This document shows, one piece after another, positions 1 to 40,794 of a DNA stretch of 64,000 bases. Under the pieces are notes generated by a model, which had not been told where the DNA came from, did no database searches, and saw only the letters and a program-made list of their open reading frames with translations. This stretch comes from Lama guanicoe. Taxonomy: Eukaryota. The position numbers and the translations under genes were made by a program. Where the stretch lies: assembly GCA_013239625.1 (NCBI GenBank), contig MU055906.1:1-64000 (forward strand), in the 5' to 3' direction. Position 1 is the stretch's first letter; every line of letters begins with the position of its first letter.

Positions 1-35
1 ACAGCTGCTGTTGACTCAGCTGAGATGAGGTGTCT

Positions 36-2247
36 TAATGTCATTTTGCAAGATGTACATTCAAAAATGGAGGGATAGCTCAGGCCAAACATGAAAATCC
101 CAGCTTTTGTCATCAATACCCAAGAAGGGAGTATCCCACGGCCCTTCTATTCCCAAAATGAAACGTGGAGCACGAATTTGTTTGAAGTGGACCAAAATTG
201 GAAGAGGAATGCTAGCAGCATTCTTTGCTTTTCCCCATGGATGCCTTCTGTTGACATTGCAAAATCTGGAGAAGCAGGGATACTGAGGCCGAACTTGTGA
301 AAAGGCCTTTCAAAGTACACATGGACAGTTCTGGCCAGCATGCAGTGCTCTACTAAAATCTTGAATCATGACAATTGGCCCAACCAGAAATTGTTTCCCT
401 AGAGTGAAAGATTCTAAAACCTGTCAAACATATTGCTTCCTATCTAGGAGATAGTCTCACAAGAATCTTTGTTTGGCCATTACTTCATACCAGCTAGAAT
501 GCATTCCAAGATGGCTGAAGTTGAGGAAGGAAAGTCAGGATGCAGTGAAATCTTATGGAAGATGAAGACAGGCTAGTACTCCAGAGACAAAACCTCATGT
601 TTGAAAAACTGGCAGATGACCGAAAACTTCCACATGTGCTCAAATCCAAGATGGGAACAGGTTTCCAAGACTAGGTGCAGCTAACACATATTGCTACATT
701 CTGTCCAGGTAGTCCTTTCAGCATGCAGAAATTTGCTCGATTCATATGTTCAGAGGGGGAGCTTCGAGAATTCACAGGGGGTATTAATACATGTCCTCAC
801 TCACAAGCCAGAAGTAGGATGGTCCTCAATACCACCACTTACATGATCCCAAAAAGGTAGAAGGGGATTTCACACACACACTCTACCCTCTAATGACAAA
901 TACCTACAAGATACATTGCGCAGCCACTCATCTTCAAGAGCCATTCTTTTGGCAATGTTTCCAAATTCGCAGGTGACATTCCTAAAGAGACTAGAAGAGG
1001 AGATGAAAAGAGCAGACTCAATGTGAGTATGTGAGAAGGCCTACCAGAACTTGGATTTTGGGTTGCATCCCCAACACAAAAATTCTCATCCTGACAACAC
1101 AGATGAAGTAAATTTTTTCACACTGAGTCTATTCCCAAGATGCATCTTCTGTGAACATTATGGTTAATCTGCCGGAATTTAGAAGACCCATTCAAACAAT
1201 CCTCTTTCCACTTTGCTTTTTATGCTGCATAACAGCAGGGTCTGCTGAGGGGCTGTTTGTGTTTCTATGATGAGTTGAAGCCAAGGTTGTTCAGGACAGG
1301 AACACAGGCTACTTAAGGAATCCATGGAAACTCAGGTCTCCCTTGAGACCTGGAAAGTTGCTCCATCTTTTCCGTTTGGTTCCTGAGTGGAAAGATTGTC
1401 TAAGAATAGGCACGAGAATCTGGGTAGTGAGAGATATTCTCCCACTTCTAACACCTCTCTTGGCATTCTGTCCAGGAATGTTTTCAAGCTGTGTTCCATT
1501 TGACAACTCATGACAAATTTGAGAGTAATTGTTTCAGAATCAGGTTATATTTTTCTTTCCAAATCACTGAAAGTGCACTTCCCATTACTGCCCAAGTATG
1601 AAATCATCCTTACACATTTCATTTCCAAAATAGTAGATGTTGGAATATTCCAGGCATGTAGCTGAAGATCACAGAAACTTTCCTGCAGATGGCTTGAGAC
1701 AGATTTTATCACTTTTCTAAAGACAGTTCAACATCTGTGAAAACCGTGATTCCATGTGCTGGAGAGGGCAAGGTTTTGGGGATCACTGAAATAGACCCAT
1801 TTCCCAATTGCCTAAATACTCTGTCTTGTAATGAAGTAGATGTGGTGAATTTTCTTCAAACGTGCCTTCTCCAAAATTCAGAAAGGTGAAGAGTATATTG
1901 AACCAAAGCATGACATATTCAGGGGGGAGTACACTCAAATCTATCTTCTTTTGTGTTTTTCACCCTACAGAAAATTTCAAGACAGCTGAAGTAAATTATC
2001 TGATTTTGGTGAAGAACTGGGACCTATAAAAATATACAGATAGGCTCACTTCCGTCCCTGAAAATCAATGTGACCCCATTGAGACAGTGAAATGAAAATT
2101 GGCCCACAGCCTATTCCTCCAACTAGGGACATTTCTGAAGGTGTATTTCACCTAAGGTAACAGGGAAGAGGGTTTTTTGCACCAATAACTCATCATTCCT
2201 AGTAGCTATCCAAACAGCTGCTGTTGCCTGTGCTGAAATGCAGTCCT
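36..2247. repeat. Cryptic internal ~245-bp subunit periodicity, nine subunits per monomer (shown for A1; applies to all monomers)
   Basis: A degenerate TTCCCAAGAGTGG-like anchor recurs at about 148, 391, 640, 885, 1127, 1376, 1618, 1864, 2112 (spacings 242-249). A second anchor (TCAGAAC...ATAGGCT...CC...CACA.AAA) recurs with the same period. Confidence 0.8.
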
Positions 2248-4488
2248 TAATATCACCTTCCCAGATGTACCTTCATAACATGCAGGATCCTCATACCAAA
2301 CATGGAAATCCCTGCTTTTTTCTTCAATTCCCATGAAGGGAATTCCCAAGTCTCTTCTGTTCGCCAAAAGAACCATATGTGAAGCATTTGTGTGTAGCTG
2401 ATTTAAACAGAAAATGTATTTTTAAACACATTCTTTGCACCTTTCCTTGGATTCTCTCTGTTGATAGTGAAGTACAAGAAGAAGCTGATATCCTAAGGAT
2501 GAATTTGAACAGAAGCCCCTCACAGTACAGATGGACCAGTGTTCCCCTTAGGCGAAATTCTGTGCTTCCAAATTCTGGGATAAGTTGAACTTAACCTCTC
2601 CCTAAGTGTATTCCATATTTGTAAGATTTTAAAATCTGAGGTGCACAGAACCTCCTATCTAGGTGATATTTTCACTCGAGTTTTGATATCGCTGTAAACT
2701 GATGTGAATGAGAATGCATTCGAATATTGCTGAAGTTGAGGAATGAAAGGCAGGTTGCAGTGTAATCTTACAGAATATGGTGATGTACTCATGTGCCAAA
2801 GGGAGAAGCCATGTATTTGAAAAGTGGCAGAAGACCGAAAACATCCTCATGTTTGAGACAAATTTGGGAAAGGAAGGGGTGTGTGAAATTCCCTTCTTTT
2901 GAATTAGTGGCAAAAGTAAGACTGGGTTCATTTAACAAGAAGTGCTTTCTTCTGTCCAAGTAGTCCTTTCAGCAAGGGGAAGAATGCTTGATCAACATGT
3001 TCAGTGAGGTTAACATAGAGATTTCAGTGGGTGTTTGAATGCCTAGCCTGAATCACAAGTAAGACACGGGATTGTTTCTCAATCACTCAAAACTGGGGAT
3101 CCAAACAAGGCAGAAGGAAGTTTCCCACACACAATTTTTCCTCTAGTGACAAAAAGCAGCAAGATGCATTGCACAGCATCTCTTCCTCAAGAGATAACCC
3201 GCTGGCAATATTTACAACTTGGCTGGCAACTGCTGAAGGCATCAGAAGCAGAGATGAGGTGAGCTAACTTACTGCAAAAGTGTGAGAAGGCATATCAGAG
3301 ATCAAAGATATGCTTGCTTCCCAACAACACAAACACTCCATTATCATGACAGCACAGATGAGGGAAATTGTCTGAAATCATTGTATTCTCAGTATGAGTC
3401 AAGTGCCAAAGTTTGGGTGGATGTGAGTGAAAATACAAAAACCATTCAATCATCCTTTCATCTTCATTCGGATGCTTCCATTTAGCAGTGACAAGTGAGG
3501 GGCTGTGGTTTTTCCAAAGAGGAGCTCACGCCAAGGTCTTTGAGGGAAGGAACATAGATTAATTTGAGAAACCATGTAACTCAGTGATCACAATGAGGCC
3601 CGTGTATTTGGTGAATATTTTCCACTTGATTCCAGGGTGGGACAGTTGTCTATGATTCAGAACAATAAGCTGCATAGGAAGAGATATTGTTCCACTTCTG
3701 CCACCGTAGTTGCCATGCTGTCAAAGAACGGTTTCATGCTGGGTTCAATTAGACATCTCAAGATCATGTTGAGGGAAAATGTTTCAAAACCTAGACATAG
3801 GCTTCTTTCTCATTCATAGAAACCAATTTTTCCCAAAAAGCCACAAGGCAGAAATCATTCTTACTCGATTCATTTTGAGCAACAAACATTCTGGAAGGTC
3901 CCGGGCATGGAGAAGAATGTTGTTGACACTCTCCTACAAATTGCTTTCCACATTCTCTCTCTATTTCATAAAGTTAGTTTAACATAAGAGAAAACTGTGT
4001 TTCCATGTGAAATACAAGCCAAGACCAACTGAGAAACTGACACACAGCCTTTTCCAAACTGTCAGAAACTTCTGGCTTGCAAACAATGTGATGGAGAGAA
4101 TTTCCTTCAAAAAGGCCTTATCCAAGATTGAGAATTGTTATAGGATTTATTGAACCCAAGCAGTCATTTAGGAGAGATTACCTTCCAAGCTGTTTTCTTT
4201 CTTGCTATTTTTCCTACAGAAATCTTCATAATGGCTGAAGAGAAATATCTATGCACAGAAGCCTTTCCAAATTTAAAAATGGGCTCACATCCATCCTTGA
4301 AGATCAATGTGTCCCCAAAAAGGTGATGCAATGAAAACTGGCCCACATTGTATTCCTCAAAACAGGGAAGTTACTGAAGGTGAATTTCACCTGAACTAAT
4401 GCTGAAGAGGAGTTCTCTGCACCAAAAAGTCAGCATTCTTCATAGTTTTCAAAAGTGCTGCTGTTGACTCTGCTGAGATGAGGTGTCT
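36..4488. repeat. AB unit: A1 (36-2247) + B1 (2248-4488)
   Basis: A landmark at 36, B landmark at 2248, next A at 4489. Unit phase is set arbitrarily by the landmark. Confidence 0.93.
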
Positions 4489-7400
4489 TAGTGTCACTTT
4501 GCCAGGTGTACCTTCAAAACGAGGAGGGATAGCTCAGGCCAAACATGAAAATCTCTGCATTTGCCATCAATTCCCAAGAAGGGAGTATCCCATGGTCTTT
4601 CTGTTCCCAAAATGAAATGCAGGGCAAGCATTCTTTTGAAGGGTACCTAAATTTCAAGAGAATTCTTAGCAGCATTCTCTGCTTATTCCATTGAATTCTG
4701 TGGGCATTGCAATATCTGGAGAAGCTGGAGTTCTGAGGCCGAAGTTATGAAGAGGCCTTTCCAAATACACATGGAGAATACCGGCCAGCATGCTGTGCTC
4801 TACCAAAATCTTAGATCATGTCAACTCGTATGACCCCGAATTGTTTCCCAAGAGTGAAAGATTCAAAAACATGTGGAATACAGGGCATCCTATCTAGGTG
4901 ATACTCTCACAAGTATCTTTATCTTGCAATAACTTCATGCCAGCTAGAATGCATTTCAAGATGGCTGAAGTTAAGGAAGGAAAGTCAAGTCGCAGTATAA
5001 TCTTACAGAACATGAAGACAGGCTCATACTCCAAAGACAAATTCCTCACATTTGAAAACTGACAGAATTCTGACAACTTCCACGTGTGCTGAATTCCAAG
5101 TTGGGAACGGTTTCCAAGACTTGGTGCAGCTAACAAAATATACTTCATTCTGTCCAAGTAGTCCTTTCAACATGTGGAAATTAGCACGATGAAGACGTTC
5201 ACTGGGGGAAATTTGAGAATTCACAGGGGGTTTTAATGTATGGCCTCACTCAAAATTTAGATGTAGAACAGCCCTCAATCCCACCACTTACATGATCCCA
5301 ACAAGGCAGGGAGGTTTCCCACACACACTCTTTCCTCTAGTGGCAAATACCTACAAGATGCATTGCACAGACCCTCATTTTCAAGCAACATTCTGTCGAC
5401 AAACTTTCCAACATCGCAGGTGACACACCTAAAGACACTACAAGAGGAGATGAAGGAACATGACTCAACGTAACTGTGTGAGAAGGCCCATCAGAACTTG
5501 TATTTTGGCTCAATATCCCAACACAAAAATTCTCTTATCCTGACAATGAAGATGAAGGAAATGTTTTTGCACTCATTGTATTCTCAAGGTGCATCATCTG
5601 TGAACGTTAGGTTTGACCTGAAGGATATTAGAAGACCATTCCAACAATCCCCTTTCTAAGTTGCTTTGAATGCTTCATAACAGCTGGGTCACCTGAGGGG
5701 CTGTCTGTGTTTAACATCCTTTTCACCTTGCTTAGAATGCTTTGTAACAGCTGGGACTGCTGAGGGGCTGTTTGTGTTTCTATTATGAGTTGGAGACATG
5801 GCCATTCAGGACAGGAACAAAGGATATGAAGAGAAATGGTGGAAACTCATGGTACCCCTGAGGCCTGTGAATGTTGCTCCACATTTTCCATTGGGTTCCT
5901 AGATTGGGATGATTGTCTAATATTCGGCACAAGAGGCTGGGTAAGGAGAAATTATCCCCACTTCTATCATCTCTCTTGGCATGCTGTCCAGGAACATTTT
6001 CAAGCTGGGTTCCATTTGATATCTCGAGACAATGTTGAAAGACATTATTTCAGAACAAAGATATAGGTTTCTTTCCATTCACAGAAATTGTTTTTCCCAT
6101 GATGGCACAAGGAAGAAATCATCCTTACCCGCTACATTTCCATAAGGAATCATGATGGAAAATTACTTGCATGTAGCAAAAGGTCACAGAGACTTTCCTG
6201 CAAAAGTTTGACACACATTTTCTCACTTTGTAAAGACTGTCCAACATCTGAGGAAACCGTGATTCCATGTGCAATAGAGGCCAAAATTTTGTGGACCACT
6301 GAAATAGACCCATTTCACAAATGGCTAATCACTCTGTCTTGCATTGAAGGAGAGGGAGCAAATTTTCTTCAAATGTGCCTTCCCCAAATTGAGAATTGTT
6401 ACAGGATATATTGAACCTAAGCAACACTCGTTCATGATGGAGTACACTCAGAGCTGTCTCCTTTTGTGCTACTCTTCCAACAGGAATTTCATGAGCTGAT
6501 GTAAATTACCAGTGTTTGTTGAAGAAAAGAGGCCTATGAGAAGGTACAGATGAGCTCACTTCCATCCCTGAAAATCAATGTGTCCCTGAAAAGGCAGTGA
6601 ATTAAAAATTGTCCCAAACTGTATTCCTCCAAGTAGTGACTTTTCTGAAGGTGAATTTCACCTAAATTAACACTGAAGAGGATTCCTTTGCACCAATAAC
6701 TCATCATTCCTAATAGCTTTCCAAACAGCTGCTGTTGGCTTAGCTGAAATATAATCCTTAATGTCACCTTCCCAGATTTACCTTCATTACATGCAGGGAA
6801 CCACAGGCCAAACATGGATATCCTTGCTTTTATCATGAATTCCCAAGAAAGGAATTTCACAAGTCCCTTCTTTTCCCCAAAATAACCAAATGGGAAGCAT
6901 TTGTGCGCAGCTGATATGAACTGAAGGTGACAATCTAAAGAGCATTCTTTGCACCTTTCCTTGGATTATCACTGTGGACTTTGAAGATCAAAGAAAAGCT
7001 GATGTACTAAGGATGAACTTGAGCAGAAGCCTCCTAGAGTACATACGGACCATTCTCCCCCTAAGGTATAACTCTGCATGTCAAAGTCTGGGATAAAGTC
7101 AACTTAACCTCTCCCCAAGTGTATTACATATTTGCAAGATTTTAAAATCTGAGGCACACAAAGCGTCCTAACTATGAGACGTTTTCACAAGATTTTTGGT
7201 CTCAATATCAACTGATGCTAACCAGAATGCAATTGAAGTTGGCTGAAGTTGAGGATTGAAATGCAGGTTGAATGAAATCTTATACAACATGGTGATAGGC
7301 TCATGTGCCAAAGAGAGGAGCCAAATATTCAAAAAATGGCAGAAGGCTGAAAACTACCTCATGTGTTTGTGCCTAAAGTGAGAGAAGAAGGGCTGTGGGA

Positions 7401-9016
7401 GATTCCCTTCTTGTGAATTAGTGGCAAAAGTAAGACTGGATGCATCTAACATGAACTTCTTTCTCCTGTCCATGTAGTCCTTTCAGCAAGTGGAAGTTTG
7501 CTCGATTGACACGTTCAGTGAGGTGAACATGGTGATTTTACTGGCAGTTTCCATGCACGGCCTCAATCACTAGTAAGACAAAGGATAGCATCTCAATCCC
7601 CCAAACTTGGTGATCCCTACAGGGCAGAAGGAAGTTACCCACACACAATATTTCCTCTAGAGACAAAAACCAACAAAATGTATTGCAAAGCACTTTTTCC
7701 TCAAGAGACAATCTGTTGGCAATGTTTCCAACATCACAGAAAATTGCCTAAAGACAACCAAGGCAGAGATGAAGTGACCTACCTCACTGTGAGAGTGTGA
7801 GAAATACTATCAGAGCTCTTAGTTATGCTTGCTTCCCAACAACACAAACACTCCATTATCACAACAATACAAATGAGGGATATTGATCGCATTCATTGTA
7901 TTCCCAGTATGAATCAAGTGCCAAAGTTTAGGTTGATGTGAGTCAAATTACAAGACCATTCAAACAATCTTCTTGGCACCTTCATTTGGGTGATTCCAGT
8001 AAGCAGTTTCAAGTGGGGGCTGTGTCTGTTGCAAAGAGGAGCTTTGGCCCTGTTCGGTCAGTGAAGGAACGTAGATTACTTTGGGAAACCGTGGAACTCA
8101 GAGTCACGACGCGGCCCGTGAAACTGTTGCTTATTTTCCACTTGACTCCCAGGGTGGGATGATTGTCTTATATTCGAACCAATAAGCTGCTTAGGAAGAG
8201 ATCTTCTCCCACTTCTGCCACTGTTGTTGGCATGCTTTCAAGGAATGGTTTCAAGCTGGGTTCAATTTGTCAACTCAAGATCATGTTTAGAGAAACTTCT
8301 TCAGAACTGACACATGAGCTTCTTTCCCATTCAAAGAAACTGATTTTTCCCAAAAATGCACAAGACAGAAGTCATCCTTACATGTTTCATTTTGAGTGGC
8401 TAACATGTTGGGAGATCCCATGCATGAAGCCGAAATTTGTAGAGACTGTCCTGCAAATGGCTTTCCACATTCCCTCTCTCTTTCATAAAGCTAGTTCAAA
8501 ATAAGGAAAAAACTGTGATTCCATGTGAAATAGGAGCCAAGACCTTGTGGTACACTGTTACACAGCCATTTCCCAACTGCCAGAATTCTCTGAATTGCAA
8601 CCAAGTTGATGGAGTGAATTCCTTTCAAGCATGCCTTATCCCAAGGTTAGAATGGTTATAGGGTATATTGAACCCAAGCAGTCATTTAGAAGAGGTTACC
8701 TTCCAAGATGTCTTCTTTTCTGCTATTCTTCCTACAGAAATCTTCATAATGGCAGAAGTGAAATATCTATGTAGGATGATGAAAAGAGGTGTTTCTGAAT
8801 ATGCAAATAGGTTCACTTGCGTCCCTGAAGATCAATGTGTCCCCAACAAGGCAGTGCAATGAAAACTGGCCCACATCATATTCCTCCAAATAGAGAAGTA
8901 ACAGAAGATGAAATTCACCTGAACTAATGCTAAGGAGGGGTTCTCTGCACCAAAAATCCAGCATTCCTCATAGATTTCATAAGAGCTGCTGTTGACTCAG
9001 CTGAGATAAGGTGACA
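4489..9016. repeat. AB unit: A2 (4489-6758, carries the 67-bp duplication) + B2 (6759-9016)
   Basis: Landmarks at 4489, 6759, 9017. Confidence 0.93.
5643..5779. repeat. 67-bp tandem duplication in A2
   Basis: TGCTTCATAACAGCTGGG at 5671 and TGCTTTGTAACAGCTGGG at 5738. Confidence 0.92.
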
Positions 9017-12000
9017 TAATGTGACATTGCCAGATGTACCTTCACAACATGGAGGGATAACTCAGGCTAAACATGAAAATCCTTGCTTTTGCCATCAGTT
9101 TCCAAGAAGGGAGTATCCCACGGCCCTTCTGTTCCCGAAATGAAATGCAGGGCAAGCATTCTTTTGAAGTGTACCCAAATTGCATGATGGTTGCTAGCAG
9201 CATCCTCTGCTTCTTCCATTGGATGCATTCTGTGGAGATTGCAAAATCGGGAGAAGCTGAGGTACTGAGGACATCTTCTGAAAAGGCCTTTCCAAGCTCA
9301 CATGGACAGAGCTTTCCAGCGTTCTGTGCTCTACCAAAATCTTGGATCACATCAACTCGCCTGACCACAAGTTATTTTCCTAGAGTGAAAGATTCTAAAA
9401 ACTGTGGAACACATTGCATCCTATCTAGGAGATAGTCTCATAAGAATCTTTGTCTCATCATAACTTCATGCCAGCTAGAATGCATTTCAAGATGGCTGAA
9501 GCTGAGGAGGGAAAATCAACTTGCAGTATAATCTAATGGAACACAAAGACAGGCTCATATGCCAAAGAAAAATTTCTCACGTTTGAAAGCTGGCAGGATA
9601 CTGAAAATTTCCAGATGCTCAAATCCAAGTTGGGAACAGGTTTCCAAGACTGGGTGCAGCTAATACTAAAAGCTTCATTCTGTCCAAGTAGTCCTTTCAG
9701 CATGCGGAAATTTGCTCAATGGAGATGTTCAGTGAGGGAGTTTTAAGAAATCACAGGCCGTTTTAATGCATGGCCTCAGTTACAAGTTAGACGTAGGATG
9801 GGTCCTAAATCCCACCACTTATGTGATTCCAACAAGGCAGAAGGAGGTTTCCCACACAAACTCATTCCTGTAGTGGCATATACGTACAAGATGCATTGCA
9901 CAGCCCCTCATTTTCAAGACACATTCTGTTGGCAAAGTTTCCAACTATGCAGGTGTCTTTCCTAAAGAAAGTATCATAGGAGATGAATGGAGCAGACTCA
10001 TTGCAAGTGAGTGAAAGGCCTATCAGAACTTGGATTTTGGATTGCTTCCCCAACACAAAAATTCTCTTAACCCGACAATGCAGGTGAAGGAAATTATTTC
10101 ACACTTATTGTATTTCAAAAATGAGTCATCTGTGAATGTTAGGGTTGATCTGTCGGAAATTAGAAGGACCGTTTCAACAATCCTCTTTCCACCTTGCTTA
10201 GAATGCTTCATAACAGCTGGGTCTGCTGGGGGGCTCTTTGTGTTTCAACTTCTTTCCACCTTGTTTAGAATGCTTTGTAACAGCTGGGACTGCTGAGGGG
10301 CTGTTTGTGTTTCTATGATGAGTTGGAGCCAAGGCTTTTCAGGAAAAGAACACAGGCTACAAAGGAAACTCAAGGCTTCCCTGAGGCCTTAGAAATTGTT
10401 CCTAGTTTTTTGTTTGGTTCCCAGATTGGAATGATTTTCTAAGATTCAGCACAAGTAGCTGGGTCAGGAGAAATCTCCTACCTCTAACACCTCTCTTGGC
10501 ATGCTATCCTGGAACATTTTGGGTTCCATTTGACATCTTGAGACAAAGTTGAAAGAAATTGTTTCAGAACTAGAATATAGGCTAATTTCCAAGCTATCAA
10601 ATGTGTCTGTCCCATGATGGCACAATGGAGAAATCATTCAAACCTTTCCATTTCCATAATGGAGTATGTTGGAAGGTTCTGTGCATGTAGCCGTAGGTCA
10701 CAGAGGCTTTCTGCAAATGAGTTGCCACAGATTTTCTCACTTTTGTAATGACAGTTCAACATCTGAGAAGACCATGATTCATTGTCCAGTAGAGGCCAAT
10801 ATTTTGTGGACCACTGAAATAGATACATTTTCCAAATACCTAACTAATCTGTCTTGCAACAAAGTTTATGGGGTGTATTTTCTTCAATCATGCTTTCTCC
10901 AAATTTGAGAATTGCTACAGGATATATTAAACCAATGCACGACTCATTCAAGATTGAGTATAAACAAAGCTGTCTTCTTTTGTTCTATTCTTCCTACTGA
11001 CGAGTTCATGAGAGCTGAAGTAAATTTTCTGAGTTCAATGAAAAACAGAGTCCTATGAGAATGTGTAGATGGGCTCCATTTCATCCCTGAAAATTAATGT
11101 GTCCCTAATGAGGCAGTGCAGTGAAAACTGGCCCACATCCTATTCCTCCAAATAGGGAAGTTTCTGAAAGTGAATTTTCCCTAAAGTAACACTACAGATG
11201 ATATCTTTGCACAAATAACTCAGTATTCCAAATAGCTTTCCATAGTGGCTGAGCTGAATTATGGTCCCTAATGTCTCCTTCCCAGAGGTACCTTCAGAAC
11301 ATTTAGGGAACCTCAGGCCAAACATGGAAATCCCTACTTTTATCATGAAGTCAAAGAAGGGAAATTCCCAAGTCTCTTCTGTTCCCCAAAATAACCATAT
11401 GTAAAAGATCTGTGTGTAGCTGATATGAACTGAAGATGACTTTCTAAAGAGCATTCTTTGTGCCTTTCCTTGGATTGTCTCTGAACAGAGAAGATCAAGG
11501 AGAAGCTGATGTACTAAGGACGAACTTGAGCAGAAGCCTCTCAGAGTACGGACGGACCATTCTTCCCCTTAGGCAAAATTCTAGCTTCAAAAGCCTGGGT
11601 TAAAGTCAACTTAACCTGTCTCAAAGTGCATTCCATATATGCAGGATTTTAAACACTGACAGGCACAGAGGATCCTATCTAGTAGATATTTTACATGATT
11701 CTTGATCTCACCATCAACTGATGCTAACCAGAATGCATTCAAATTTGTATGAATTGAGGAATGAAAGGCAGGTTGCAGTGAAATCTTACAGAACATGGTA
11801 ATAGACTCGAGTGCCAAAAAGAGAAGCCACATATTTAGAAAATGGCAGAAAACTGAAAAATTCCTTATGTGTTTGAGCCTTAAGTGCAAAAAGTAGGGCT
11901 GTGGGAGATTCCCTTGTTGTGAATTAGTGGCAAAAGTAAGACTGGGTGCATCTAATATGAAGTGCTTTCTCCTGTCCATGTAGTCCTTTCAGCAAGTGGA

Positions 12001-13523
12001 AATTTGCTCGATCAACCCTTTCAGTGAGTTGAACATGGAGGTTTTCCTGGGTGTTTGAATGCACAGCTCAATCATTAGTAAGACATAGGATCACTTCTCA
12101 ATCCCTCAAACTTGGTGATACCCACAGAGCAGAAGGAAGTTTCCCACACACAGTCTTTCCTTTAGTGACAAAAAGCAACAAGATGCATTGCACAGCACAT
12201 ATTCCCTAAGAGACAACCTGAAAGCAGTGTTTCTAACTTCACGAGCAATTGCCTAAATACAACCGAGGCAGAGATGGAGTGACCTACCTCACTGCGAGAG
12301 TGTGAGAAAGCATATCAGAGCTCGTAGTTATGCTTGAATCCCAAGCTCACAAGCAATCCATGATCAAGACAGCGCGGATGAGGGCCATTGGCCACACTCA
12401 TTGTATTCCCACTATGAGTCAAGTGCCAAAGTTTGGGTTGATGTGAGCGAAATTACAAGACCCATTCAAAGATTCTTCTTTGCACCTTCATTCAGATGCT
12501 TACAGTAAGCAGTGTCACGTGTGGGTTTGTGGCTCTTCCAAAGAGAACCTGGTGCCCAGATCCTTCATGGCAGGAACATATATTTATTTGGGAAAATATG
12601 GAAATCAGTGCTCATGATGAGGCCCGAGAGATTGTTGTATATTTTCCACTTGATTCCCAGCGTGGGATGATTGTCTGAGATTTGGATTAATAAGCTTGAT
12701 AGGAAGAGATTTTCTCCCAATTCAGCCACCATTGTTGGCATGTTCTCAAAAAACATTTTTAAGCTGGGTTCAATTTGACAAATCAAGATCATGTTTAAAG
12801 AAACTGCTTCAGAACTGAGACATAGACTTCTTTCCCATTCACAGAAAACCATTTTTCCAAAAAAGGCACTACACAGAAATTATCCTTACCCATTCCATTT
12901 TGAGCAGTGAACATGTTGGTTTGTCCCATGCATGTAGATGAAGGATGTAGAGACTCTCCTACAAATGGCTTTCCACATTTCCTCTTTATTTCATAAAGCT
13001 AGTTCAACATAAGAGAAAAACTGTTATTCCATGTGGAACAGGAGCCAAGACATTGTGGAACACTGACACACAGCTGTTTCCCAACTGCCAGAAAACTCTG
13101 ACTTGCAAAAAACGTGATGGAATGAATTTCCTTCAAACATGCGTTATCCAAAAATGAGAATTGTTATAGGATATATTGAACCCAAGCACTCATTTAGGAG
13201 AGATTACAATTCAAGTTGTCTTCTCTCTTGTTATTCTTCCTACAGAAGTCTCCTTAACACCTGAAGAGAAATATCTACACTTGATAATGAAGAGAGAGTT
13301 TTCTGAATCTAAAAATTGGCTCACTCCTGTCCTTGAAGTTCAATGTGTCCCCAAGAAGGTAGTGCAATGAAAAGAGGCCCACATCATATGCCTCCAAATT
13401 TTGTAGTTACAGAAGGTGAATTTCACCTGATAAATGCTGAAGAAGGATTATGTGCACCAAACATTCAGCATTCCTCACAGATTTTGAAAGAGTTGCTGTT
13501 GACTGAGCTGAGATGAGGTATTT
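9017..13523. repeat. AB unit: A3 (9017-11268, carries the 67-bp duplication) + B3 (11269-13523)
   Basis: Landmarks at 9017, 11269, 13524. Confidence 0.93.
10177..10313. repeat. 67-bp tandem duplication in A3
   Basis: GAATGCTT..TAACAGCTGGG at 10201 and 10268. Confidence 0.92.
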
Positions 13524-16500
13524 TAATGTCACTGTGCCAGAGAAACCTTCACAACATGGAGTGGTAGCTCAGGCCAAACATGAAAATCCCTGCTTTTGCC
13601 ATCAATTCCCAAGATGGGAATATCCCATGGTCATTCATTTCCTGAAGTGATACAGCAAGCATTCAACTGAAGTGGACCCAAATTGCAAGAGGATTGCTAG
13701 CAGCATTCCTTAGTTCTCCCATTGAATGCCTTCTGTGGACATTGCAAAATCTGGAGAAGCTGGGGTTCTGAGGCCAAACTACTGAAAAGGACTTTCCAAG
13801 TACAGATGGACAGTTCTTGCCAGTGTGCTGTGCTCTATCAAAACCTTGGAGCATGTCTACTTGCCCAACCCCAAATTGTTTCCCAAGAGTGAAAGATTCT
13901 AAAACATATGGAACAGAAGACGTCCTATCTAGGAGATTTTCTCACAGAATCTTTGTCTCGCCATAATTTCATGCTACCTAGAATGTGATTCATGATGGCT
14001 GAAGTTGAGGAAGGAAAGTCAGACTGCAGTGAAATCTTATGGAATGAGAAGACAGGCTCATAGGCCGAAGACAAATATCTCACTTTTGAAAAATAGCAGA
14101 AGACTGGAAACTTCGACATATGCTCAATTCTAAGATGGCAACAGGTTTCCAAGTCAGGATGCAGCTAACAAAAAGTGCTTCATTCTGTCCAAGTAGCCCT
14201 TTCAGCATGTGGAAATCTGCTCAATTGACACGTTCACTGGAGAGAACTTTGGGAATTCACCGGGGTATTTGATTCATGGCCTCACTCAGAAGTTAGAAAT
14301 AGGATGGGTTCTCAATCCCACCACTTACATGATCCCAACAAGGAAGAAGCAGGTTTTCCACACACACTCTTTCCTCTAGTGAAAACCACAAGATGCATTG
14401 CCCAGCCCCACATGTTCAAGAGACTTTGTGTTGACAATGTTTCAGCCATCACAGGTGACATTCCTAAAGAATTTAAAAGAGGAGATGAAGGGAACGGACT
14501 TAATGTGATTGTGTGAGAAGGCTTATCAGAACTTGGATTTTGGTTTATTTCCCCAAACACGAAAATTCTCCTAAGACAGCAATGCAGATGAAGTTAATTT
14601 TTTCAAACTCATTGCATTCCCAAGATGCGTCACCATGAACGTTAGGGCTGATCTGATGGAAATTAGAAGACCCGTTCAAACAATCCTCTTTCAATTTTGC
14701 TTAGAATGCTTCATAATAGCTGGGTCTGCTGAGGGGCTATTTGTGTTTCTCAGATTGGTTGGAGCCAAGGCCATTCAGGACAGGAATAGAGGACACATAA
14801 GGAATCTGCGGAAACTCAGGGCTCCCCTATGTCCTGCAAAGTTGATCCATTTTTTTCCATTTGGTCCCAAGAGTGCAATGATTGTCTAAGATTTGGCACA
14901 AGAAGCTTAGTAGGGAGAGATACTCTCCCACTTCTTTCACCTCTCAGGGCGTGCTGTCTCGGAACATTTTCAAGTTGGGATCAATTTGATGTCTAGAGAC
15001 AAAGTTGAGAGAAATTGTTTCAGAACCAGGATATAGGCTTCTTTCCAAGTCACAGAAACCATTTCCCCCATGACAGCACAATGCAGAAATCATCCTTACC
15101 CATTTCATTTCCATAAGGGAACATGTTGGAAGATTCCATGCATGTAGCCAAGGGTCACAGTGAATATCCAGCAAATGGCTTGCCACAGTTTTCCTCAATT
15201 TTGAAAAGACAGTTCAAAATCTGAGAAAACCATGATTCCATGTGCAGTAAGGGCCAATGTTCTGTGGAACAATGAAATAGACACGGTTCACAAATGCCTA
15301 AATAATCTGTCTTGCAACAAATTAGATGGGGCAGATTTTCTTCAAACATACCTTCTACAAAATTGAGAATTGTTACAGGGTATATTGAAATGAAGCACTA
15401 CTCATTTAGGAGAGAATACACTCTAAGCTGTCTTCTTTTCTGCTATTCTTCCTACAGAAAAGTTCATGAGAGCTGAAGCAAATTATCTGAGCTCAATGAA
15501 GAACAGAGACCTATGAGAATGTGCAGAAGTGTCACTTCTGTCGCTGAAAATTACTGTGTTCCTGAAGAGCCAGTGTAGTGAAAATTGGGCAACATTGTGT
15601 TCCTGCAAACAGAGACAGTTTTGAAAGTGAATTTCACCTAAAGTAATGCTGAATAGGGTTTCTTGGCACCAATAACTCAGCATTCCTAATAGCTAACCAA
15701 AGAGCTGCTGTTGACTGAGCTGAAATGTGGTCATTAATGTCACCTTCCTAAATGTACCTTCATAACATGCAGGGAACCTCAGGCCAAACATGGGAATCCC
15801 TGATTTTATCATCAATTCCCAAGAAGGGAATTCCCCAATTCCCTCCTTTTCCCCCAAAAAACCATATATGCAGCATTTGTGTGCAGCTGATATGAACTGA
15901 AGATTACTTTCTAAAGAGCATTCTTTGCAAAATTCCATGGACTCTCTCTGTAGATAGTGAAGATCATGGAAAAGCTGTTGTACTAAGGGAGATCTTGAGC
16001 AGAAGCCCCTCAGAGTACCAATGGAGGGTTCTTCCCCTTAGACAAAATTCTGCATTTCCAAAGTCTGGGATAAAGTCAACTTAACCTCTCCCCAAGTTTA
16101 TCCCAGATTTGCAAGTTTTTAAAATCTGAGGCACACAGAGCATCCTATCTAGGAGATATTTTCACACAATTCTTGATCTCACTGACAGCTGATGTTAATC
16201 AGAATGCATTCAAAGATGGCTAAAGTTGAGGGAAGAAAGGCAGGTTGCAGTGAAATCTTACAGAACATGGTGATAGGCTCATGTGCCAAAGAGAGAAGCC
16301 ACATATTCGAAAAATGGAAAAAAAGACTGAAAACATATTCATGTGTTTGAGCCTAATTTGGGAAAGGAAGGACTGTGGGAGATTCCCTTCTTGTGAATTA
16401 GTGGCAAAAGTAAGACTGGGTGCATCTAGCATGAAGTGCTTTCTCCTGTACAAGTAGTCCTTTCGGCAAGGGGAAGATTGCTCAATTGACACATTCAGTG

Positions 16501-17965
16501 AGGTGAACACTAAGACTACACTGGGTGTTTGAATGCCCAGCTCCAATCACAGGTAAGACATTGGTTAGTTTCTCAACCACTCAAAACTGGAGATCCCAAC
16601 AAAGTAGAAGGAAATCTCCCACACAAACTTTCATCTAGTGACAAAAACCAGGAAGATCCATTGCACAGCATCTTTTCCTCAAGAGACACCCTGCCAGCAA
16701 TGTTTCCAACTTGCCAGGATATTGCCTAAAGACACCCAAATCGGAGGTGAAATGAGCTAACTGACTGTGAGAGTGTGAGAAGGACTATCAGAGTTTGAAT
16801 TTACACATGATTCCCAACAACACAAACACTTCATTATCACGACAGCACAGATGAAGGATAATTTCTGCACTCATTGTATTCCCAGTATGAGTCAAGTGCC
16901 AAAGTTTGGGTTGACATGAGCAAAAACTCAAGACCCATTCAAAGAATCTTCCTTGCAACTTCATTTGGATGCTTCCAGTAAGCAGTGTCAAGTGCTTGCC
17001 TGTTGTTCCAAAGAGAGGCTTGCGCCAAGGTTGCTTGTGGCAGGAACATAGATAAAATTGGGAAAGTGTGGAACTCAGTGCTCACGATTATGCTTGTGCA
17101 GTTGGTTCCCAGGGTTGGACTGTTGTCTAAGATTCGGAACTATAAGCTGGGTAGGAAGAGATATTCTCCCACTTCTACCACCGTTTTTAATGCTCTCAAG
17201 GAAATGTGTCAGGCTGGTTCAATTTGACATCTCAAGATCATGTTCAGAGAGACTGTTTTAGAATCGAGACAAAGGCTTGTTTCCCATTCACAGAAACCCA
17301 TTTTTCCAAAAAAACCACAAGACAGAAGTCATACTTATCCATTACATTTCAAGCAACTAACATGCTGGAAGGTCCCATGCATGTAGGGGAACATCGTAGA
17401 GCCTCTCCTACAAATGGCTTTCTGCATTCTCTCTATCTTTCATAAAGTTAGTTCAACATAAGAGAAAACTGTGATTCCATGTGGAATACAAGCCAAGACC
17501 AAGTGGTACACTGACATACAGCCTTTGCCCTGTTGCCAGAATTCTCTGATTTCCATTCAAGCTGATGCAATTTCCTTCAAAAATGCTTTATCCAAAATTA
17601 AGAAGTATTATAAGATGTATTGGTCCCAAGCAATCATTTAGGAGAGTTTACCTTCCAAGTGTTTTATTTCCTGCTATTCTTCCTACAGAAATGTTCATGA
17701 GACCTGAAGTAAATTATCTGAGTTTGATGAAGAACAGAGGCCTATGTGAATGTGCAGATGGGCTCACATCTGTCCCAGAAAATCAATGTGTCCTCAAAGC
17801 AGCAGTGCAATGAAAGTTGGCCCAAATCATATTCCTCCATATAAGGATGTTTTTGAAGGTGAATTTCACCTAAAGTAATGCTGAATAGGGTTTCTTTGCA
17901 TCAATTATTGGCGTTCCTTCTAGCTTTCCTAAGAGCTGCTTTCGGCTGACCTGAAATGTTGTTCT
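13524..17965. repeat. A4 (13524-15734) + hybrid B4 (15735-17965; B-type to ~17690, then the tail of an A monomer)
   Basis: Landmarks at 13524, 15735, 17966. Diagnostic bases switch type across TGCTATTCTTCCTACAGAA at ~17672-17690. Confidence 0.88.
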
Positions 17966-20217
17966 TAATGTCACTTTCCCATATGTACCTTCATAACATG
18001 CAGGAAACTTCAGGCCAAACATGGAAATCTCTGCTTTTATCATTAATTCCCAACAAGGGAATTTCCCAAGTCCCTTCTGTTCCTGAAAAGGGCCATATGT
18101 GAAGCATTTGTGTGCAGCTGATAAGAACTGAAGATGACATTTTTAGAGCATACTTTGCACCTTACCTTGTATACTCTCTGTGGACATTGAAGACTAAAGA
18201 GAAGTGAGATACTTGGGATGAATTTGAGCAGAAACCTCTCAGAGAATGGACACACCATTCTTCCCATTAGGCAAAACACTGAGCTTCCAAAGTATGGGAT
18301 CAATTCAACTTAACCACTTCCCAAGTGTATCCCAGATTTGCAAGATTTTAACATCTTAGTGCACACAGCATCCTATCTAGGGGACAATTTCACAAGATTA
18401 TTGATCTCACCATCAACTGATGCTAAAGAGAATACAAGCAACCATGGCTGAAATTGAGGAAGAAAAGGCAGGTAGCAATGATATCTTATAGAATATGGTG
18501 ATATGTTCGTGTGCCAAATGGAGTAGCCACATATTCAAAAAGTGGCAGAAGACTCATATCTTCCTCATGTGTTTGAGCCGAATTTGGGAATAAGGGCTGT
18601 GGGAGATTCCCTACTTTTGATTTAGTGGCAAAAGTAAGACTGGGTGCATCTAACACGAAGTGCTTTCTCCTGTGCAAATAGTCCTTTCAGTAAGTGGAAG
18701 ATTGCTCGGTCAAACATTCAGTGAGGTGAACATTGAGATTTCACTGGGGGTTTGAATGCATGGCCTCAATCACAAGTAAGCCATAGGATTGTTTCTCAAT
18801 CCCTCAAATTTGGTAATCACAACAAAGCAGAAGGAAGTTTCCCATGCGCAATCTTTCCTCTAGTGACAAAAACCAACAAGATGCATTGCACAACACCACT
18901 TCCTCAAGAGACAATCTGTCGGCATTCTTTCCAAAGACATGGGCATTTGCCTAAAGGCAACTGAAGTAGAGATGAAGTGAGCTACCTCACTGCAAGAGTG
19001 TGAGAAGGCCTATCAGAGCTCATAGTTATGCTTGCTTCTCAACAACACAAACACTCCATTATCACAACAGCGCTGATGAGGGACATTGTACACACTCATT
19101 GTAATCCCAGTGTAAGTCAAGTGATACATTTTTGGTTAATGTGAACGAAATTATAAGAGCCATTTAAACAATCATCCTTGCACCTTCATTCAGATGCTTC
19201 CAGTAAGCAGTGCCAAGTGAGGAGCTGTGGCTGTTCCAAAGAGAGGCAGTGCCCACATCATTCAGAGCAGGAACATAGAATAATTTTGGAATTCGTGGAA
19301 CTCAGTGCTCATGATGAGGCCTGTGAATTTGCTGCACATTTTCCCCTTGATTCAAAGGGTGGGATGGTTGTCTAAGATCCAGAACAATAAGCTGGGTAGG
19401 AAGAGATCTTCTCCCACTTCTGCCACTCTAGCTGCCATGCTCTCAAGGAACGGTGTCAAGCTGGGTTCAATTTGACATCTCAAAATCATGTTGAGAGAAA
19501 CTTTCAGAACTGAGACAAAGGCTTCTTTCCCATTCACAGAAACCCACATTTCCCAAAAAGGCCCAAGAAAGAAATCATCCTTACCCATTTCATTTCGAGC
19601 ATCTAACCTGCTGGAAGTTCACATGCATGCAGATGAAGGCCTTAGAGACTGTCTTACAAATGGCATTCTGCATTCTCTCTCTCTTTAATAAAGTTAGTTC
19701 AATATAAGAGAAAACTTTGATTCCATGTGGAATACAAGCTAAGACCAAGTGGGACACTGACACACAGCCTTTTCATAACTGCCAGAATTCTCTGACTTGC
19801 AAACTAGGTGATGGAGAGAATTTCCTTCAAGAAAGCTTATCCAAATTTGAGAAGTGCTATAGGACATATTGAAACTAAGCACTCATATAGAAGAGATTAC
19901 CTTCCAAGCTGTTTTCTTTCTTGCTATTCTTCCTACAGGAATCTTCACAACAACTCAAGGAAAATTTCTACTTTGGATGATGAACAGAGGCCTTTCCAAA
20001 TGTGTAAATGGGCTCACTTCCATCCTTGAAAATCAATGTGTCACCATCAAGGCAGTGCAATGAAAACTGGCCCACGTCTTACTCCTCCAAAGAGGAAAGT
20101 TACAGAAGGTGAATATCACATGAACTAATGCTGAAGAGACTTTCTCTGCACATAATATTCAGAATTCCTCAAAGATTTCAAAAGAGCTGCTGTTGACTCA
20201 GCTGAGATGAGGTATTT
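17966..20217. repeat. Supernumerary B monomer (B5), breaking the A/B alternation
   Basis: The landmark at 17966 has B-diagnostic context (CTGAAATG..., TCATAACATGCAGGAAACTTCAGGCCAAACATGGAAAT) directly after another B monomer. Confidence 0.9.
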
Positions 20218-40300: not shown

Positions 40301-40794
40301 CCATGTGAATAGGAGACAAGACCTTGTGGAACACTGACACTCAGCCATTTCCCAACTGCCAGAATACTCTGACTGGCAATGAATTTGATGGATTGAATTT
40401 CCTTCAAACATGCCTTATCCAAATTGGAGAATTGTTATAGGATATATTGAACCCAAGCTCTCATTTGGATAGGTTATCCTCCAAGCTGTCTTCTTTCTTA
40501 CTATTCTTCCAAGAGAAATCTTCCTAATGGCTGAAGAAAATTTTCCATGTTGGGTAATGAAAAGAGGATTTTCCGAATGTGCAAATGGGCTCAATTCTGT
40601 CCTTGAAGATCAATGTGTCCACAACAAGGCAGTGGAATTAAAACTGGCCCACGTCATATTCCTACAAATAGGGAAGTTTCAGAAGGTGAATTTCACCTGA
40701 ACTAATGCTGAAGAGGGGTTCTCTGCACCAAATATTGAGCATTCCTCATAGATTTTGAAAGAGCTTCTGTTGACTCAGCTGACATGAGTTGTCT
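37310..40794. repeat. AB unit: A9 (37310-39498) + internally deleted B10 (39499-40794, ~950 bp missing)
   Basis: B10 spans only 1296 bp; junction near 39787. Confidence 0.92.

What the first reader, a model, noticed from the sequence alone, without database searches (positions are those of the whole stretch)
36..4488. Hidden nested hierarchy: ~245-bp subunit x9 = ~2.2-kb monomer, x2 = ~4.47-kb higher-order repeat
Seen: each monomer looks unique at first but resolves into nine degenerate subunits. Consensus anchors by eye, positions in A1: TGTTCCCAAAATGAA (~148), TGTTTCCCAAGAGTGAA (~391), CAATTCCAAGATGGGAA (~640), CTTTCCTCTAGTGACAA (~885), TATTCCCAAGATGCA (~1127), GGTTCCCAGAGTGGAA (~1376), CATTTCCATAAGGGAA (~1618), TTCTCCAAAATTGAGAA (~1864), ATTCCTCCAAGTAGGGA (~2112); spacings are 242-249 bp and 2212/9 is about 246. 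A second motif keeps the same period: CTTACAGAACATG..GA(C/T)AGGCTC, TCACAAGTTAGACATAGGAT, TATCAGAACTTGGATTTTGGCTT, TTCAGGACAGGAACACAGGCTA, TTCAGAACCAGGATATAGGCTT, TATGAGAATGTGCAGATGGGCTC. Inference: an old ~245-bp satellite was rebuilt into an 18-subunit higher-order repeat, analogous in organisation (not sequence) to primate alpha-satellite HORs. It may be a relic centromeric or pericentromeric layer that annotation would report only as a 2.2/4.5-kb repeat.
Basis: partly seen in the sequence, partly recalled or inferred. Interest (0 to 1): 0.75.

Follow-up and report, generated by a model that had tools for sequence, protein, structure and literature searches.

The report
Fossil three-level satellite array in a camelid
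The window is an old, decayed tandem repeat of a camelid genome in which a 246-base unit was built into a 2.2-kb nine-unit block and then into a 4.5-kb pair of blocks; the nesting is real but it is a known kind of satellite architecture with no sign of present function.

Summary
The 64-kb window is one non-coding tandem array. Base autocorrelation peaks at 246, 492 and 738 bp (z about 9). All 13 units tested peak at 243-248 bp. A leave-one-position-out profile test recovers 15 of 18 held-out subunits above all 200 shuffles, in phase and on one strand. The hierarchy is 246 bp x9 = 2.2 kb (A, B) x2 = 4.47 kb. I found no 3x246 level.

The genome is a camelid (RAG1 100% identical to the protein named for Vicugna pacos). 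The array is a fossil:
- 4.47-kb units are only 72-87% alike (27 units, star-like).
- Decay is uniform along the unit and CpG-driven.
- One unit is kept at 98.6% in a related organism, so homogenisation has stopped.
- One edge holds older 2.2-kb monomers that are equidistant from A and B.

About 208 kb lie on six contigs, flanked by AT-rich L1/ERV DNA. There is no CENP-B box. A centromeric origin could not be tested.

Two features are unexplained: only two insertions in 208 kb, and a transversion-rich substitution spectrum (ts/tv 0.67).

This is a new member of a known kind. Interest is moderate.

The parts
1..64000 (+). Tandem array filling the whole window: about 14 units of about 4.46 kb, all head to tail on the + strand. 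It runs on to about 65.2 kb of contig C6432, then continues inverted.
   Evidence: blastn of unit 1 and of the consensus against the window. 259 subunit hits on the + strand.
36..4488 (+). First complete 4.45-kb unit (A+B dimer), the stretch named in the finding.
   Evidence: 87.6% identical to the consensus of 12 units.
36..2249 (+). Monomer A of unit 1 (nine subunits).
   Evidence: A and B are 70% alike in copies and 74-85% per subunit in the consensus.
2250..4488 (+). Monomer B of unit 1 (nine subunits; B3 carries about 40 extra bases).
40..286 (+). subunit A1
   Evidence: nhmmer hit; held-out score 30.7, 0 of 200 shuffles reach it
291..534 (+). subunit A2
   Evidence: held-out score 3.2, 2 of 200 shuffles reach it, the weakest that still hits
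534..743 (+). subunit A3 (internal gap relative to the profile)
   Evidence: held-out 13.9, 0 of 200
780..1024 (+). subunit A4
   Evidence: held-out 12.2, 0 of 200
1024..1269 (+). subunit A5
   Evidence: held-out 23.0, 0 of 200
1271..1511 (+). subunit A6
   Evidence: no hit when position 6 was held out, but its partner B6 scores 14.8
1514..1758 (+). subunit A7
   Evidence: held-out 16.4, 0 of 200
1765..2005 (+). subunit A8
   Evidence: held-out 5.3, 0 of 200
2013..2250 (+). subunit A9
   Evidence: held-out 29.3, 0 of 200
2263..2500 (+). subunit B1
   Evidence: held-out 8.0, 0 of 200
2499..2751 (+). subunit B2
   Evidence: held-out 13.9, 0 of 200
2750..2999 (+). subunit B3
   Evidence: held-out 5.1, 1 of 200
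3049..3272 (+). subunit B4
   Evidence: held-out 26.7, 0 of 200
3280..3518 (+). subunit B5
   Evidence: held-out 18.5, 0 of 200
3520..3762 (+). subunit B6
   Evidence: held-out 14.8, 0 of 200
3762..4006 (+). subunit B7
   Evidence: held-out 33.9, 0 of 200
4009..4250 (+). subunit B8
   Evidence: held-out 26.9, 0 of 200
4250..4493 (+). subunit B9
   Evidence: held-out 19.4, 0 of 200
17941..20213 (+). Extra single 2.27-kb monomer (B-type register) after the unit at 13524-17940, an irregularity at the monomer scale.
10184..10313 (+). 67-bp tandem duplication inside subunit A5. The same break (consensus 1233 back to 1164-1173) is seen in the units starting at 4489, 9017, 32838 and 45198.

Best explanation
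This is a fossil satellite with three nested levels, and it now decays neutrally.

Inferred history:
1. A tandem satellite of about 246 bp existed.
2. Nine diverged neighbouring copies were amplified together as a 2.2-kb monomer, giving a monomeric 2.2-kb array.
3. Two adjacent monomers, by then about 20% apart (A and B), were amplified together as a 4.47-kb dimer in one burst. That burst makes the core of the present array.
4. Homogenisation then stopped. Each unit has since drifted about 13% from the common ancestor by point substitution. The array also suffered at least two orientation switches, unit-scale deletions and duplications, and one retrovirus insertion.

The amplification steps would have gone by unequal exchange or replication-based expansion, as for other satellites. 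That mechanism is inferred, not shown.

The substitution pattern is CpG decay plus many A>T and C>A changes, and the flanks are AT-rich and L1/ERV-rich. This fits methylated, late-replicating heterochromatin. No part of the unit shows constraint, so I read it as non-functional DNA today.
For: Shown: the three periods and the in-phase, same-strand homology of all 18 subunits.

Shown: star-like divergence of units. 12 window units are 79-83% alike. 27 units from three contigs are 72-87% alike, mean 78%, over 351 pairs.

Shown: A (27 copies) and B (27 copies) are each monophyletic, with stems of 0.107 and 0.090.
- Four monomers at C6432 70.1-78.8 kb are equally far from A and B (76-79%) and branch at the base.
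- Three monomers at 88.06-95.2 kb are 70-72% from both and form their own clade.

Shown: no homogenisation since a species split. Single-copy-depth contigs of coded runs tile unit 1.
- Run X3: 0 differences in 4116 letters.
- Run X1: 5 in 4467.
- Run X7: 7 in 3978.
- Run X10: 59 in 4275 (1.4%).
- Paralogous units differ by about 20%.

Shown: neutral decay.
- Identity to the consensus in 50-column windows ranges 0.808-0.925. Permuted columns give a mean minimum of 0.809 and a 95th-percentile maximum of 0.926.
- Transitions affect 32% of cells at consensus CpG sites, against 5.3% elsewhere.
- CpG observed/expected is 0.146 in the window and 0.30 in the consensus.

Shown: no ORF above 168 aa and no Rfam family.

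Shown: the spectrum is rich in A>T/T>A (3.5%) and C>A/G>T (4.5%). These are the two classes reported as enriched in late-replicating DNA of great apes (PMC8743035, passages read).

Flanks: GC 0.34-0.36 and CpG o/e 0.06-0.09, with an L1-type endonuclease and retroviral env and gag matches.
Against: - The apparent age sits badly with the near absence of insertions. Only two interruptions above 300 bp (9,232 bp and 719 bp) occur in 207.6 kb of array span, although the flanks are full of L1/ERV remains.
- Distances calibrated on the local orthologue put the dimer burst about 21 times, the A/B split about 40 times, and the subunit coalescence about 120 times as far back as the split from organism D. 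The last figure is implausibly deep for any reasonable split date. So the clock is not linear, or the nine subunits came from already diverged variants.
- Root-to-tip lengths differ between core and edge monomers.
- The assembly ends inside the array on three contigs. Copy number and total structure are therefore lower bounds.
- Replication timing and methylation were not measured.
Confidence: 0.75

Rival explanations
1. It is specifically the relic of an ancient centromere or pericentromere. A once centromeric 246-bp satellite with higher-order units was left behind after centromere repositioning or inactivation.
For: - Nested higher-order organisation.
- An age gradient, with older undifferentiated monomers at one edge.
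- A heterochromatin-like setting and substitution spectrum.
- Most long-unit alpaca satellites in PMC13751797 lie next to centromeres (Results read).
Against: - No CENP-B core box with one mismatch or fewer. The 75 two-mismatch hits (44.5 expected) are repeats of about five sites per unit, against about three expected, which is not significant once copies are counted once.
- Only about 208 kb on six contigs.
- No other satellite in the 29-40 kb of flank read.
- The other edge (C8179, about 152.9 kb) abuts unique DNA without older layers.
- The chromosomal position is unknown.
Confidence: 0.22
2. The array is much younger than its divergence suggests. A locally very high, transversion-prone mutation rate (late replication or error-prone repair in the repeat) produced 20% divergence quickly, which would also explain why so few mobile elements have landed in it.
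For: - Non-CpG ts/tv is 0.67 (1377:2058), and 0.58 for singletons. Among the orthologous differences listed for run X10 it is 13:14.
- Two copies of a dispersed repeat inside the locus are 81.1% and 83.5% identical to 20 dispersed copies. Those 20 are 89.4% identical to one another. This suggests about twofold more change locally if the ages are equal.
- Only two insertions in 207.6 kb.
Against: - The relative dating already uses the local orthologous divergence (1.4%), so a uniformly high local rate does not shorten the ratio of about 21.
- The control repeat itself has a low ts/tv of 1.28, so part of the spectrum may be general to such DNA in this genome.
- The ages of the local repeat copies are unknown.
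Confidence: 0.2
3. It is a functional macrosatellite kept by selection at one locus, a chromatin-organising array in the manner of DXZ4 or FIRRE.
For: - It is kept at the same place, unit by unit, in five coded organism labels from eight studies.
- It is nearly free of insertions.
- It has a kb-scale unit and lies at few loci.
Against: - Decay is uniform, with no block more conserved than permuted columns allow.
- There is no ORF and no Rfam family.
- CpG is depleted.
- Units are 72-87% alike.
- None of the 20 holder runs is on record as RNA.
Confidence: 0.06
4. The 246-bp signal is not ancestral tandem repetition. It would be chance, base composition, or the internal structure of a mobile element that was amplified.
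For: - Subunits are only 41.8% alike.
- One held-out subunit (A6) was not found.
- Short internal motif recurrences exist at lags 32, 59, 91 and 108.
Against: - Shuffled, phase-shifted and reverse-complement controls all score about half the real in-phase pairs.
- 15 of 18 held-out subunits beat all 200 shuffles.
- All 13 units tested peak at 243-248 bp.
- The period covers the unit end to end, with 18 contiguous subunits.
- No long ORF or Pfam-type remnant was seen in the unit. The unit was not compared with a library of mobile elements, because none was available.
Confidence: 0.03

Closest known systems
Primate alpha-satellite higher-order repeats (features recalled, not taken from any call)
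   Same: A short basic unit is repeated head to tail on one strand. Diverged neighbours are amplified together as a larger unit. Older, less ordered layers lie at the array edge.
   Different: - The basic unit is 246 bp, not 171 bp.
- Copies of the large unit are 72-87% alike, not near-identical.
- There is no CENP-B box.
- There is no evidence of centromere function.
- There is no sequence relation (not tested).
Ruminant satellite I (0.8-1.4 kb monomers built from a 31-bp subrepeat) and cervid satellite III (2.2-kb unit); PMC7288315, passages read
   Same: Long satellite units in artiodactyls resolve into shorter ancestral subrepeats. Cervid satIII has the same unit length of about 2.2 kb.
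   Different: - Those are abundant and sit on many centromeres.
- SatIII has GC 52% and holds L1/RTE pieces.
- The array here has GC 41%, no mobile-element piece seen in the unit, a 246-bp subunit and few loci.
- Homology was not tested, because no sequences of those families were at hand.
Alpaca long-unit satellites VpaSat01-13 (PMC13751797; Results, Discussion and in-silico Methods read)
   Same: Same animal family. Units are kb-scale (1.8-8.5 kb). Several are shared by all camelids. Some lie at one or two loci (VpaSat13-2326 on chromosomes 27 and 36).
   Different: - None of the 11 sized families of Table 2 has a 4.47-kb or 2.2-kb unit at 59% AT.
- The paper has no occurrence of 'higher-order' or 'subrepeat'.
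- It finds arrays by dot plots of high self-identity, which an array of 78% identity may escape. The tool's threshold is recalled, not checked.
- Its Table S3 (14 consensus sequences, one of about 1.8 kb) and the GenBank records could not be seen.
Macrosatellites such as DXZ4 and D4Z4 (features recalled)
   Same: kb-scale unit, tens of copies, one or a few loci.
   Different: Those have near-identical, GC/CpG-rich units with a gene or factor-binding site. Here units are 72-87% alike, CpG-poor and without ORF.

Membership tests
Higher-order-repeat satellite of the alpha-satellite type | Basic units arranged head to tail on one strand, mutually homologous over their whole length | tested here: met
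   18 contiguous subunits of 243-285 bp. In-phase pairs score 91.4, against 47.6 for shuffled partners, 51.8 for shifted partners and 51.0 for reverse complements.
Higher-order-repeat satellite of the alpha-satellite type | A multi-unit block repeated as a whole, with position i matching position i of the next block better than any other position | tested here: met
   A_i against B_i is 74-85% in all 9 of 9 positions. Non-homologous pairs in the same matrix are 47-65%. In profile columns the figures are 77.5% for A_i/B_i and 41.8% for non-homologous pairs.
Higher-order-repeat satellite of the alpha-satellite type | Copies of the higher-order unit near-identical (ongoing homogenisation) | tested here: not met
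   351 pairs of 27 units: mean 78%, range 72-87%. One unit is kept as an orthologue at 98.6% in organism D.
Higher-order-repeat satellite of the alpha-satellite type | Centromeric location and CENP-A binding | not testable with these tools
   Contigs could not be placed on chromosomes, and no chromatin data were at hand.
Higher-order-repeat satellite of the alpha-satellite type | CENP-B box (NTTCGNNNNANNCGGGN), frequent but not obligatory | tested here: not met
   No hit with one mismatch or fewer in 64 kb. The 75 hits at two mismatches (44.5 expected) amount to about five sites per unit against about three expected.
Long-unit satellite built from subrepeats (ruminant satI type) | kb-scale tandem unit resolvable into a shorter ancestral repeat | tested here: met
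Long-unit satellite built from subrepeats (ruminant satI type) | High copy number on many chromosomes | tested here: inconclusive
   58 and 90 first-look candidates lie on only six contigs, and the array span is 207.6 kb. Three contigs end inside the array, so these are lower bounds.
Long-unit satellite built from subrepeats (ruminant satI type) | Sequence homology to a described family | not tested
Alpaca VpaSat families (PMC13751797) | Unit length and base composition equal to a listed family | tested here: not met
   Table 2 lists units of 3503, 5021, 3224, 5242, 8550, 5290, 5280, 3126, 5308, 5280 and 2326 bp. The nearest in length (2326 bp) has AT 36.6%, against 59% here.
Alpaca VpaSat families (PMC13751797) | Sequence identity to a deposited consensus | not testable with these tools
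Macrosatellite (DXZ4/D4Z4 type) | kb-scale unit at one or a few loci | tested here: met
Macrosatellite (DXZ4/D4Z4 type) | Near-identical units carrying a gene, CpG island or binding site | tested here: not met
   No ORF above 168 aa. CpG o/e is 0.146, and no window is more conserved than permuted columns allow. Units are 72-87% alike.

The most novel reading that the evidence does not exclude
The array is the preserved shell of an ancient camelid (or pre-camelid) centromere. It would have a core of dimeric higher-order units flanked by older monomeric layers, left at a now non-centromeric site and kept almost free of mobile elements in a late-replicating domain. That domain would have an extreme A>T and C>A mutational regime. 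If so, it would give a dated, unit-by-unit traceable example of centromere death or repositioning in a family known for a frozen karyotype. It would also be a natural experiment on how satellite DNA mutates once homogenisation stops.
Probability: 0.15. Interest if true: 0.6.

Novelty: new member of a known kind. Interest (0 to 1): 0.38.

Why it matters
Camelid satellites have only just been catalogued. That catalogue (PMC13751797) lists kb-scale units without internal analysis, and it rests on self-identity plots that may miss an array this diverged.

This locus shows that at least one camelid long-unit repeat descends from a short satellite of about 246 bp, through two successive rounds of block amplification. 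One edge still holds the intermediate stage.

The units are no longer homogenised and are individually orthologous between related organisms. The array is therefore a set of about 47 parallel neutral lineages in one chromatin setting. That makes it useful for measuring a regional mutation spectrum, which here is unusually rich in transversions, and for dating satellite turnover.

It does not by itself reveal a new kind of element.

Tried and rejected
- The 738 peak is a harmonic.
- In the consensus, subunit pairs at lag 3 (score 89.8) and lag 6 (93.7) are no closer than pairs at lag 2 (92.5), lag 4 (105.4) or lag 5 (94.1).
- The peak near 737 exceeded the peak near 246 in 4 of 13 single units. 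I read this as noise.

Link to canid satellites (same note). The genome is a camelid. No sequence comparison was possible.

Coding or RNA reading. There is no ORF above 168 aa, and none of the 4227 Rfam families reaches its gathering score.

Regular sub-period inside the 246-bp unit. Lags 32, 59, 91 and 108 are raised but are not multiples of one length. I did not pursue this.

Genome-wide search for other arrays of the 246-bp family with the sequence-only model R1. The tool failed three times. BLAST-type searches list only the best 40 candidates, all from this array. Relatives elsewhere are therefore neither found nor excluded.

Placing the locus by flanking genes.

Dating the retrovirus insertion by its terminal repeats. 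The two end repeats are 77% alike. Dispersed copies elsewhere are closer to one of them (up to 84%), so I do not treat them as a secure LTR pair.

Earlier scan notes.

Full report
WHAT IS THERE

The window (contig C6432, bases 1-64000 of 899,110) holds no N, has GC 0.41 throughout, and is one tandem array. It also finds weaker matches of about 70% at a half-unit offset. Tandem Repeats Finder, limited to periods of 500 or less, reports only a 67-bp duplication. No ORF exceeds 168 aa and no Rfam family is matched.

THE 246-BP LEVEL IS REAL

Match autocorrelation over the window is 0.2827 at lag 246, against a mean of 0.2588 (sd 0.0026). Further peaks lie at 492 and 738. With a cleaned background the z is 11.2. 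Because the units are copies of one another, I also tested each unit alone. All 13 of 13 have their 200-300 bp maximum at 243-248 bp (z 3.0-4.5).

A profile built from the 18 pieces of unit 1 tiles the window with 259 hits on the + strand. Their spacings are mostly 240-250 bp.

A profile recognises its own training set, so I repeated the test leaving out one position at a time. Training used 16 subunits. The test used the held-out A_i and B_i, each with 200 dinucleotide shuffles.
- 15 of 18 beat all 200 shuffles.
- One had 1 of 200 shuffles reaching it, and one had 2 of 200.
- One (A6) gave no hit.
- The hits lie in phase.

On a majority consensus of 12 window units the autocorrelation peaks recur at about 249, 494, 739, 985, 1233 and so on, up to 2263. 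The 18 subunits measure 250, 245, 246, 244, 249, 244, 244, 250 and 247 bp in A, and 250, 250, 285, 243, 250, 244, 246, 247 and 248 bp in B.

Global alignment scores of the 144 in-phase, non-homologous subunit pairs average 91.4 (sd 17.8). The controls are 47.6 (sd 9.1) for 918 shuffled partners, 51.8 for partners cut 123 bp out of phase, and 51.0 for reverse complements. 89% of real pairs exceed the 99th percentile of the shuffles. In profile columns the subunits are 41.8% identical (sd 4.3), against 24.6% for shifted columns.

I found no support for a further 3x246 level. Subunit pairs three or six apart are no more alike than other pairs.

WHOSE GENOME

The RAG1 reading frame of this genome is 100% identical over 99% of its length to the protein that nr names for Vicugna pacos. 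The next best, from pig and ruminants, is 94%. The genome is therefore a camelid, probably a South American one. I did not go further.

EXTENT AND SETTING

Searches of the genome with 300 and 1227 bases of the unit find 58 and 90 first-look candidates, of which 40 were scored each time. All lie on contigs C6432, C8179, C2109, C55114, C55041 and C54350.

Profile hits span 207.6 kb on five of these contigs.
- C6432: + orientation up to about 65.2 kb, then inverted to 78.8 kb. A 9,232-bp insertion follows, then inverted array again from 88.06 to 95.2 kb, then non-array DNA.
- C8179: array from about 152.9 kb to the contig end.
- C2109: array throughout its 67.9 kb, with a switch of orientation at 17.4 kb.

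Three contigs end inside the array, so all figures are lower bounds. Only two interruptions above 300 bp exist. The large one carries a retroviral Gag_p10 match, and I left it there.

The flanks read (29 kb and 40 kb) have GC 0.34-0.36 and CpG observed/expected 0.06-0.09. They carry an L1-type endonuclease and a retroviral envelope remnant, and they hold no other satellite.

THE ARRAY IS A FOSSIL

The 12 window units are 79-83% alike with almost no structure. The 27 complete units from three contigs are 72-87% alike (mean 78%, 351 pairs). There is one mildly distinct subgroup on C2109.

Identity to the consensus is 86.7%. In 50-column windows it varies no more than permuted columns do (0.808-0.925 observed; permuted mean minimum 0.809, 95th-percentile maximum 0.926). 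No part looks constrained.

Consensus CpG sites show 32% transitions, against 5.3% at other sites. This is the mark of germline methylation.

Contigs of four coded public runs, at single-copy depth, tile unit 1. The differences are 0 in 4116 letters (X3), 5 in 4467 (X1), 7 in 3978 (X7) and 59 in 4275, or 1.4% (X10, a different organism label). An individual unit is thus preserved as an orthologue at 98.6% while its neighbours differ from it by 20%. There has been no concerted evolution since that split.

None of the 20 holder runs is on record as RNA. That does not show silence.

LAYERS

At the distal edge on C6432 the dimer gives way to single 2.2-kb monomers. Four monomers at 70.1-78.8 kb are equally similar to A and to B (76-79%). 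Three monomers at 88.06-95.2 kb are 70-72% similar to both.

In a FastTree phylogeny of 61 monomers, A (27) and B (27) are each monophyletic on stems of 0.107 and 0.090. The four intermediate monomers branch at the base. The three outer ones form their own clade.

This is the intermediate stage of the history: a monomeric 2.2-kb array from which one A-B pair was later amplified. The other edge, on C8179, lacks such layers.

RELATIVE DATES

Jukes-Cantor distances are 0.0139 between the window and organism D, 0.146 from a unit to the consensus, 0.268 between consensus A and B, and about 1.12 between subunits.

Per lineage this places the dimer burst about 21 times as far back as the split from organism D. 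The A/B split comes out at about 40 times, and the coalescence of the subunits at about 120 times.

The first two figures mean tens of millions of years for any split of a million years or more. The third is too deep to be taken literally. These steps are inference.

TWO THINGS I CANNOT EXPLAIN

First, an array this old has almost no mobile-element insertions, although it sits in L1/ERV-rich DNA.

Second, the substitution spectrum is transversion-rich.
- At non-CpG sites with four clean flanking matches on each side, ts/tv is 0.67 (1377:2058). It is 0.58 for changes private to one unit.
- A>T/T>A runs at 3.5% and C>A/G>T at 4.5%, rivalling C>T/G>A at 5.4%.
- The orthologous differences listed for X10 split 13:14 by my count. 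A further 71 rows were not shown.
- Two repeat pairs inside the retrovirus insertion split 39:39 and 12:16.
- As a control, 190 pairs among 20 dispersed copies of one of those repeats give 1.28. Part of the effect may therefore be general to such DNA in this genome.

A>T and C>A are the classes reported as enriched in late-replicating DNA of great apes, where the overall rate is also higher (PMC8743035, passages). The rates imply an equilibrium GC near 25% (my arithmetic). This fits the AT-rich flanks.

COMPARISON WITH WHAT IS KNOWN

Nested satellites are familiar. Alpha-satellite higher-order repeats are one example (recalled). Ruminant satellite I, built from a 31-bp subrepeat, is another, and cervids have a 2.2-kb satellite III (PMC7288315, passages).

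The one systematic study of camelid satellites (PMC13751797; Results, Discussion and in-silico Methods read) lists units of 1.8-8.5 kb. None matches this one in length and composition. The text has no occurrence of 'higher-order' or 'subrepeat'. Its supplementary Table S3 and the deposited sequences could not be seen, so identity with one of its families is not excluded.

My paper searches for camelid satellites returned no other study of them.

No CENP-B core box occurs with one mismatch or fewer.

VERDICT

The hidden hierarchy is real and well supported. It is a new member of a known kind of architecture and is preserved as a fossil. A centromeric origin remains possible but untested.

Noticed in passing
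window 1-64000 and loci L001-L026 (all array copies): The substitution spectrum is transversion-rich. Non-CpG ts/tv is 0.67 (1377:2058), and 0.58 for singletons, with A>T/T>A and C>A/G>T nearly as common as C>T/G>A. The orthologous differences listed for run X10 split 13 ts to 14 tv. A control of 190 pairs of a dispersed repeat gives 1.28.
   Followed up: partly
array span on C6432, C2109, C8179, C55114, C55041: Only two interruptions above 300 bp occur in 207.6 kb of an array whose units are about 20% diverged. They are 9,232 bp at C6432 78826-88057 and 719 bp at C2109 59090-59808. The flanks, by contrast, are full of L1/ERV remains.
   Followed up: partly
C6432 about 65,102-65,171 (L001) and C2109 about 17,421-17,425 (L010): There are two orientation switches. 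One joins + consensus position 2047 to - position 501. The other joins - position 2026 to + position 3761. One breakpoint of each lies within about 20 bp of the same unit position, so they may be the two ends of one inversion. That would order the contigs C8179, C2109, C6432. The other pair of positions does not match.
   Followed up: no
window 5644-5780, 10184-10313, and the same place in the units starting at 32838 and 45198: A tandem duplication of about 67 bp inside subunit A5 is shared by four non-adjacent units of the window. These units are also slightly closer to one another (81-82%) than the 79-80% typical of the other pairs. This points to a unit subfamily.
   Followed up: no
window 23530/23532; C8179 about 160,244-160,247 (L009): Two of the four larger internal deletions seen against the consensus begin and end at nearly the same offset of subunits. 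These are 749 bp (consensus 3331-4079, three subunits apart) and 259 bp (consensus 2232-2490, one subunit apart), each within about 10 bp, as if exchange in the 246-bp register still happened. The other two (970 bp and 355 bp) do not. This is my reading.
   Followed up: no
subunit profile columns 45-52, 68-75 and 111-118; window lags 32, 44, 59, 91, 108: The 246-bp subunit holds three spaced copies of one short T/C-rich 8-mer, and it shows raised autocorrelation at several irregular short lags. This may be a trace of a still shorter ancestral repeat.
   Followed up: no
C6432 78,826-88,057 (L006 4826-10000, L002 1-4057): A degenerate retrovirus-like insertion of 9.2 kb sits between the intermediate and the outer monomer layers. 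It has a Gag_p10 match (E 5.8e-12), no ORF above about 200 aa, and end repeats 77% alike. It was described only.
   Followed up: partly
L011 (G000:C12519:14446141-14449644), L012, L013: Nuclear copies of mitochondrial cytochrome b: 14 matches in the genome, the best with nine in-frame TGA and no other stops. They were seen while looking for a taxon marker.
   Followed up: no
C8179 117,808-119,679 (L030): A 936-bp unit repeated 2.0 times at 98% in the flank, next to an L1-type endonuclease ORF.
   Followed up: no
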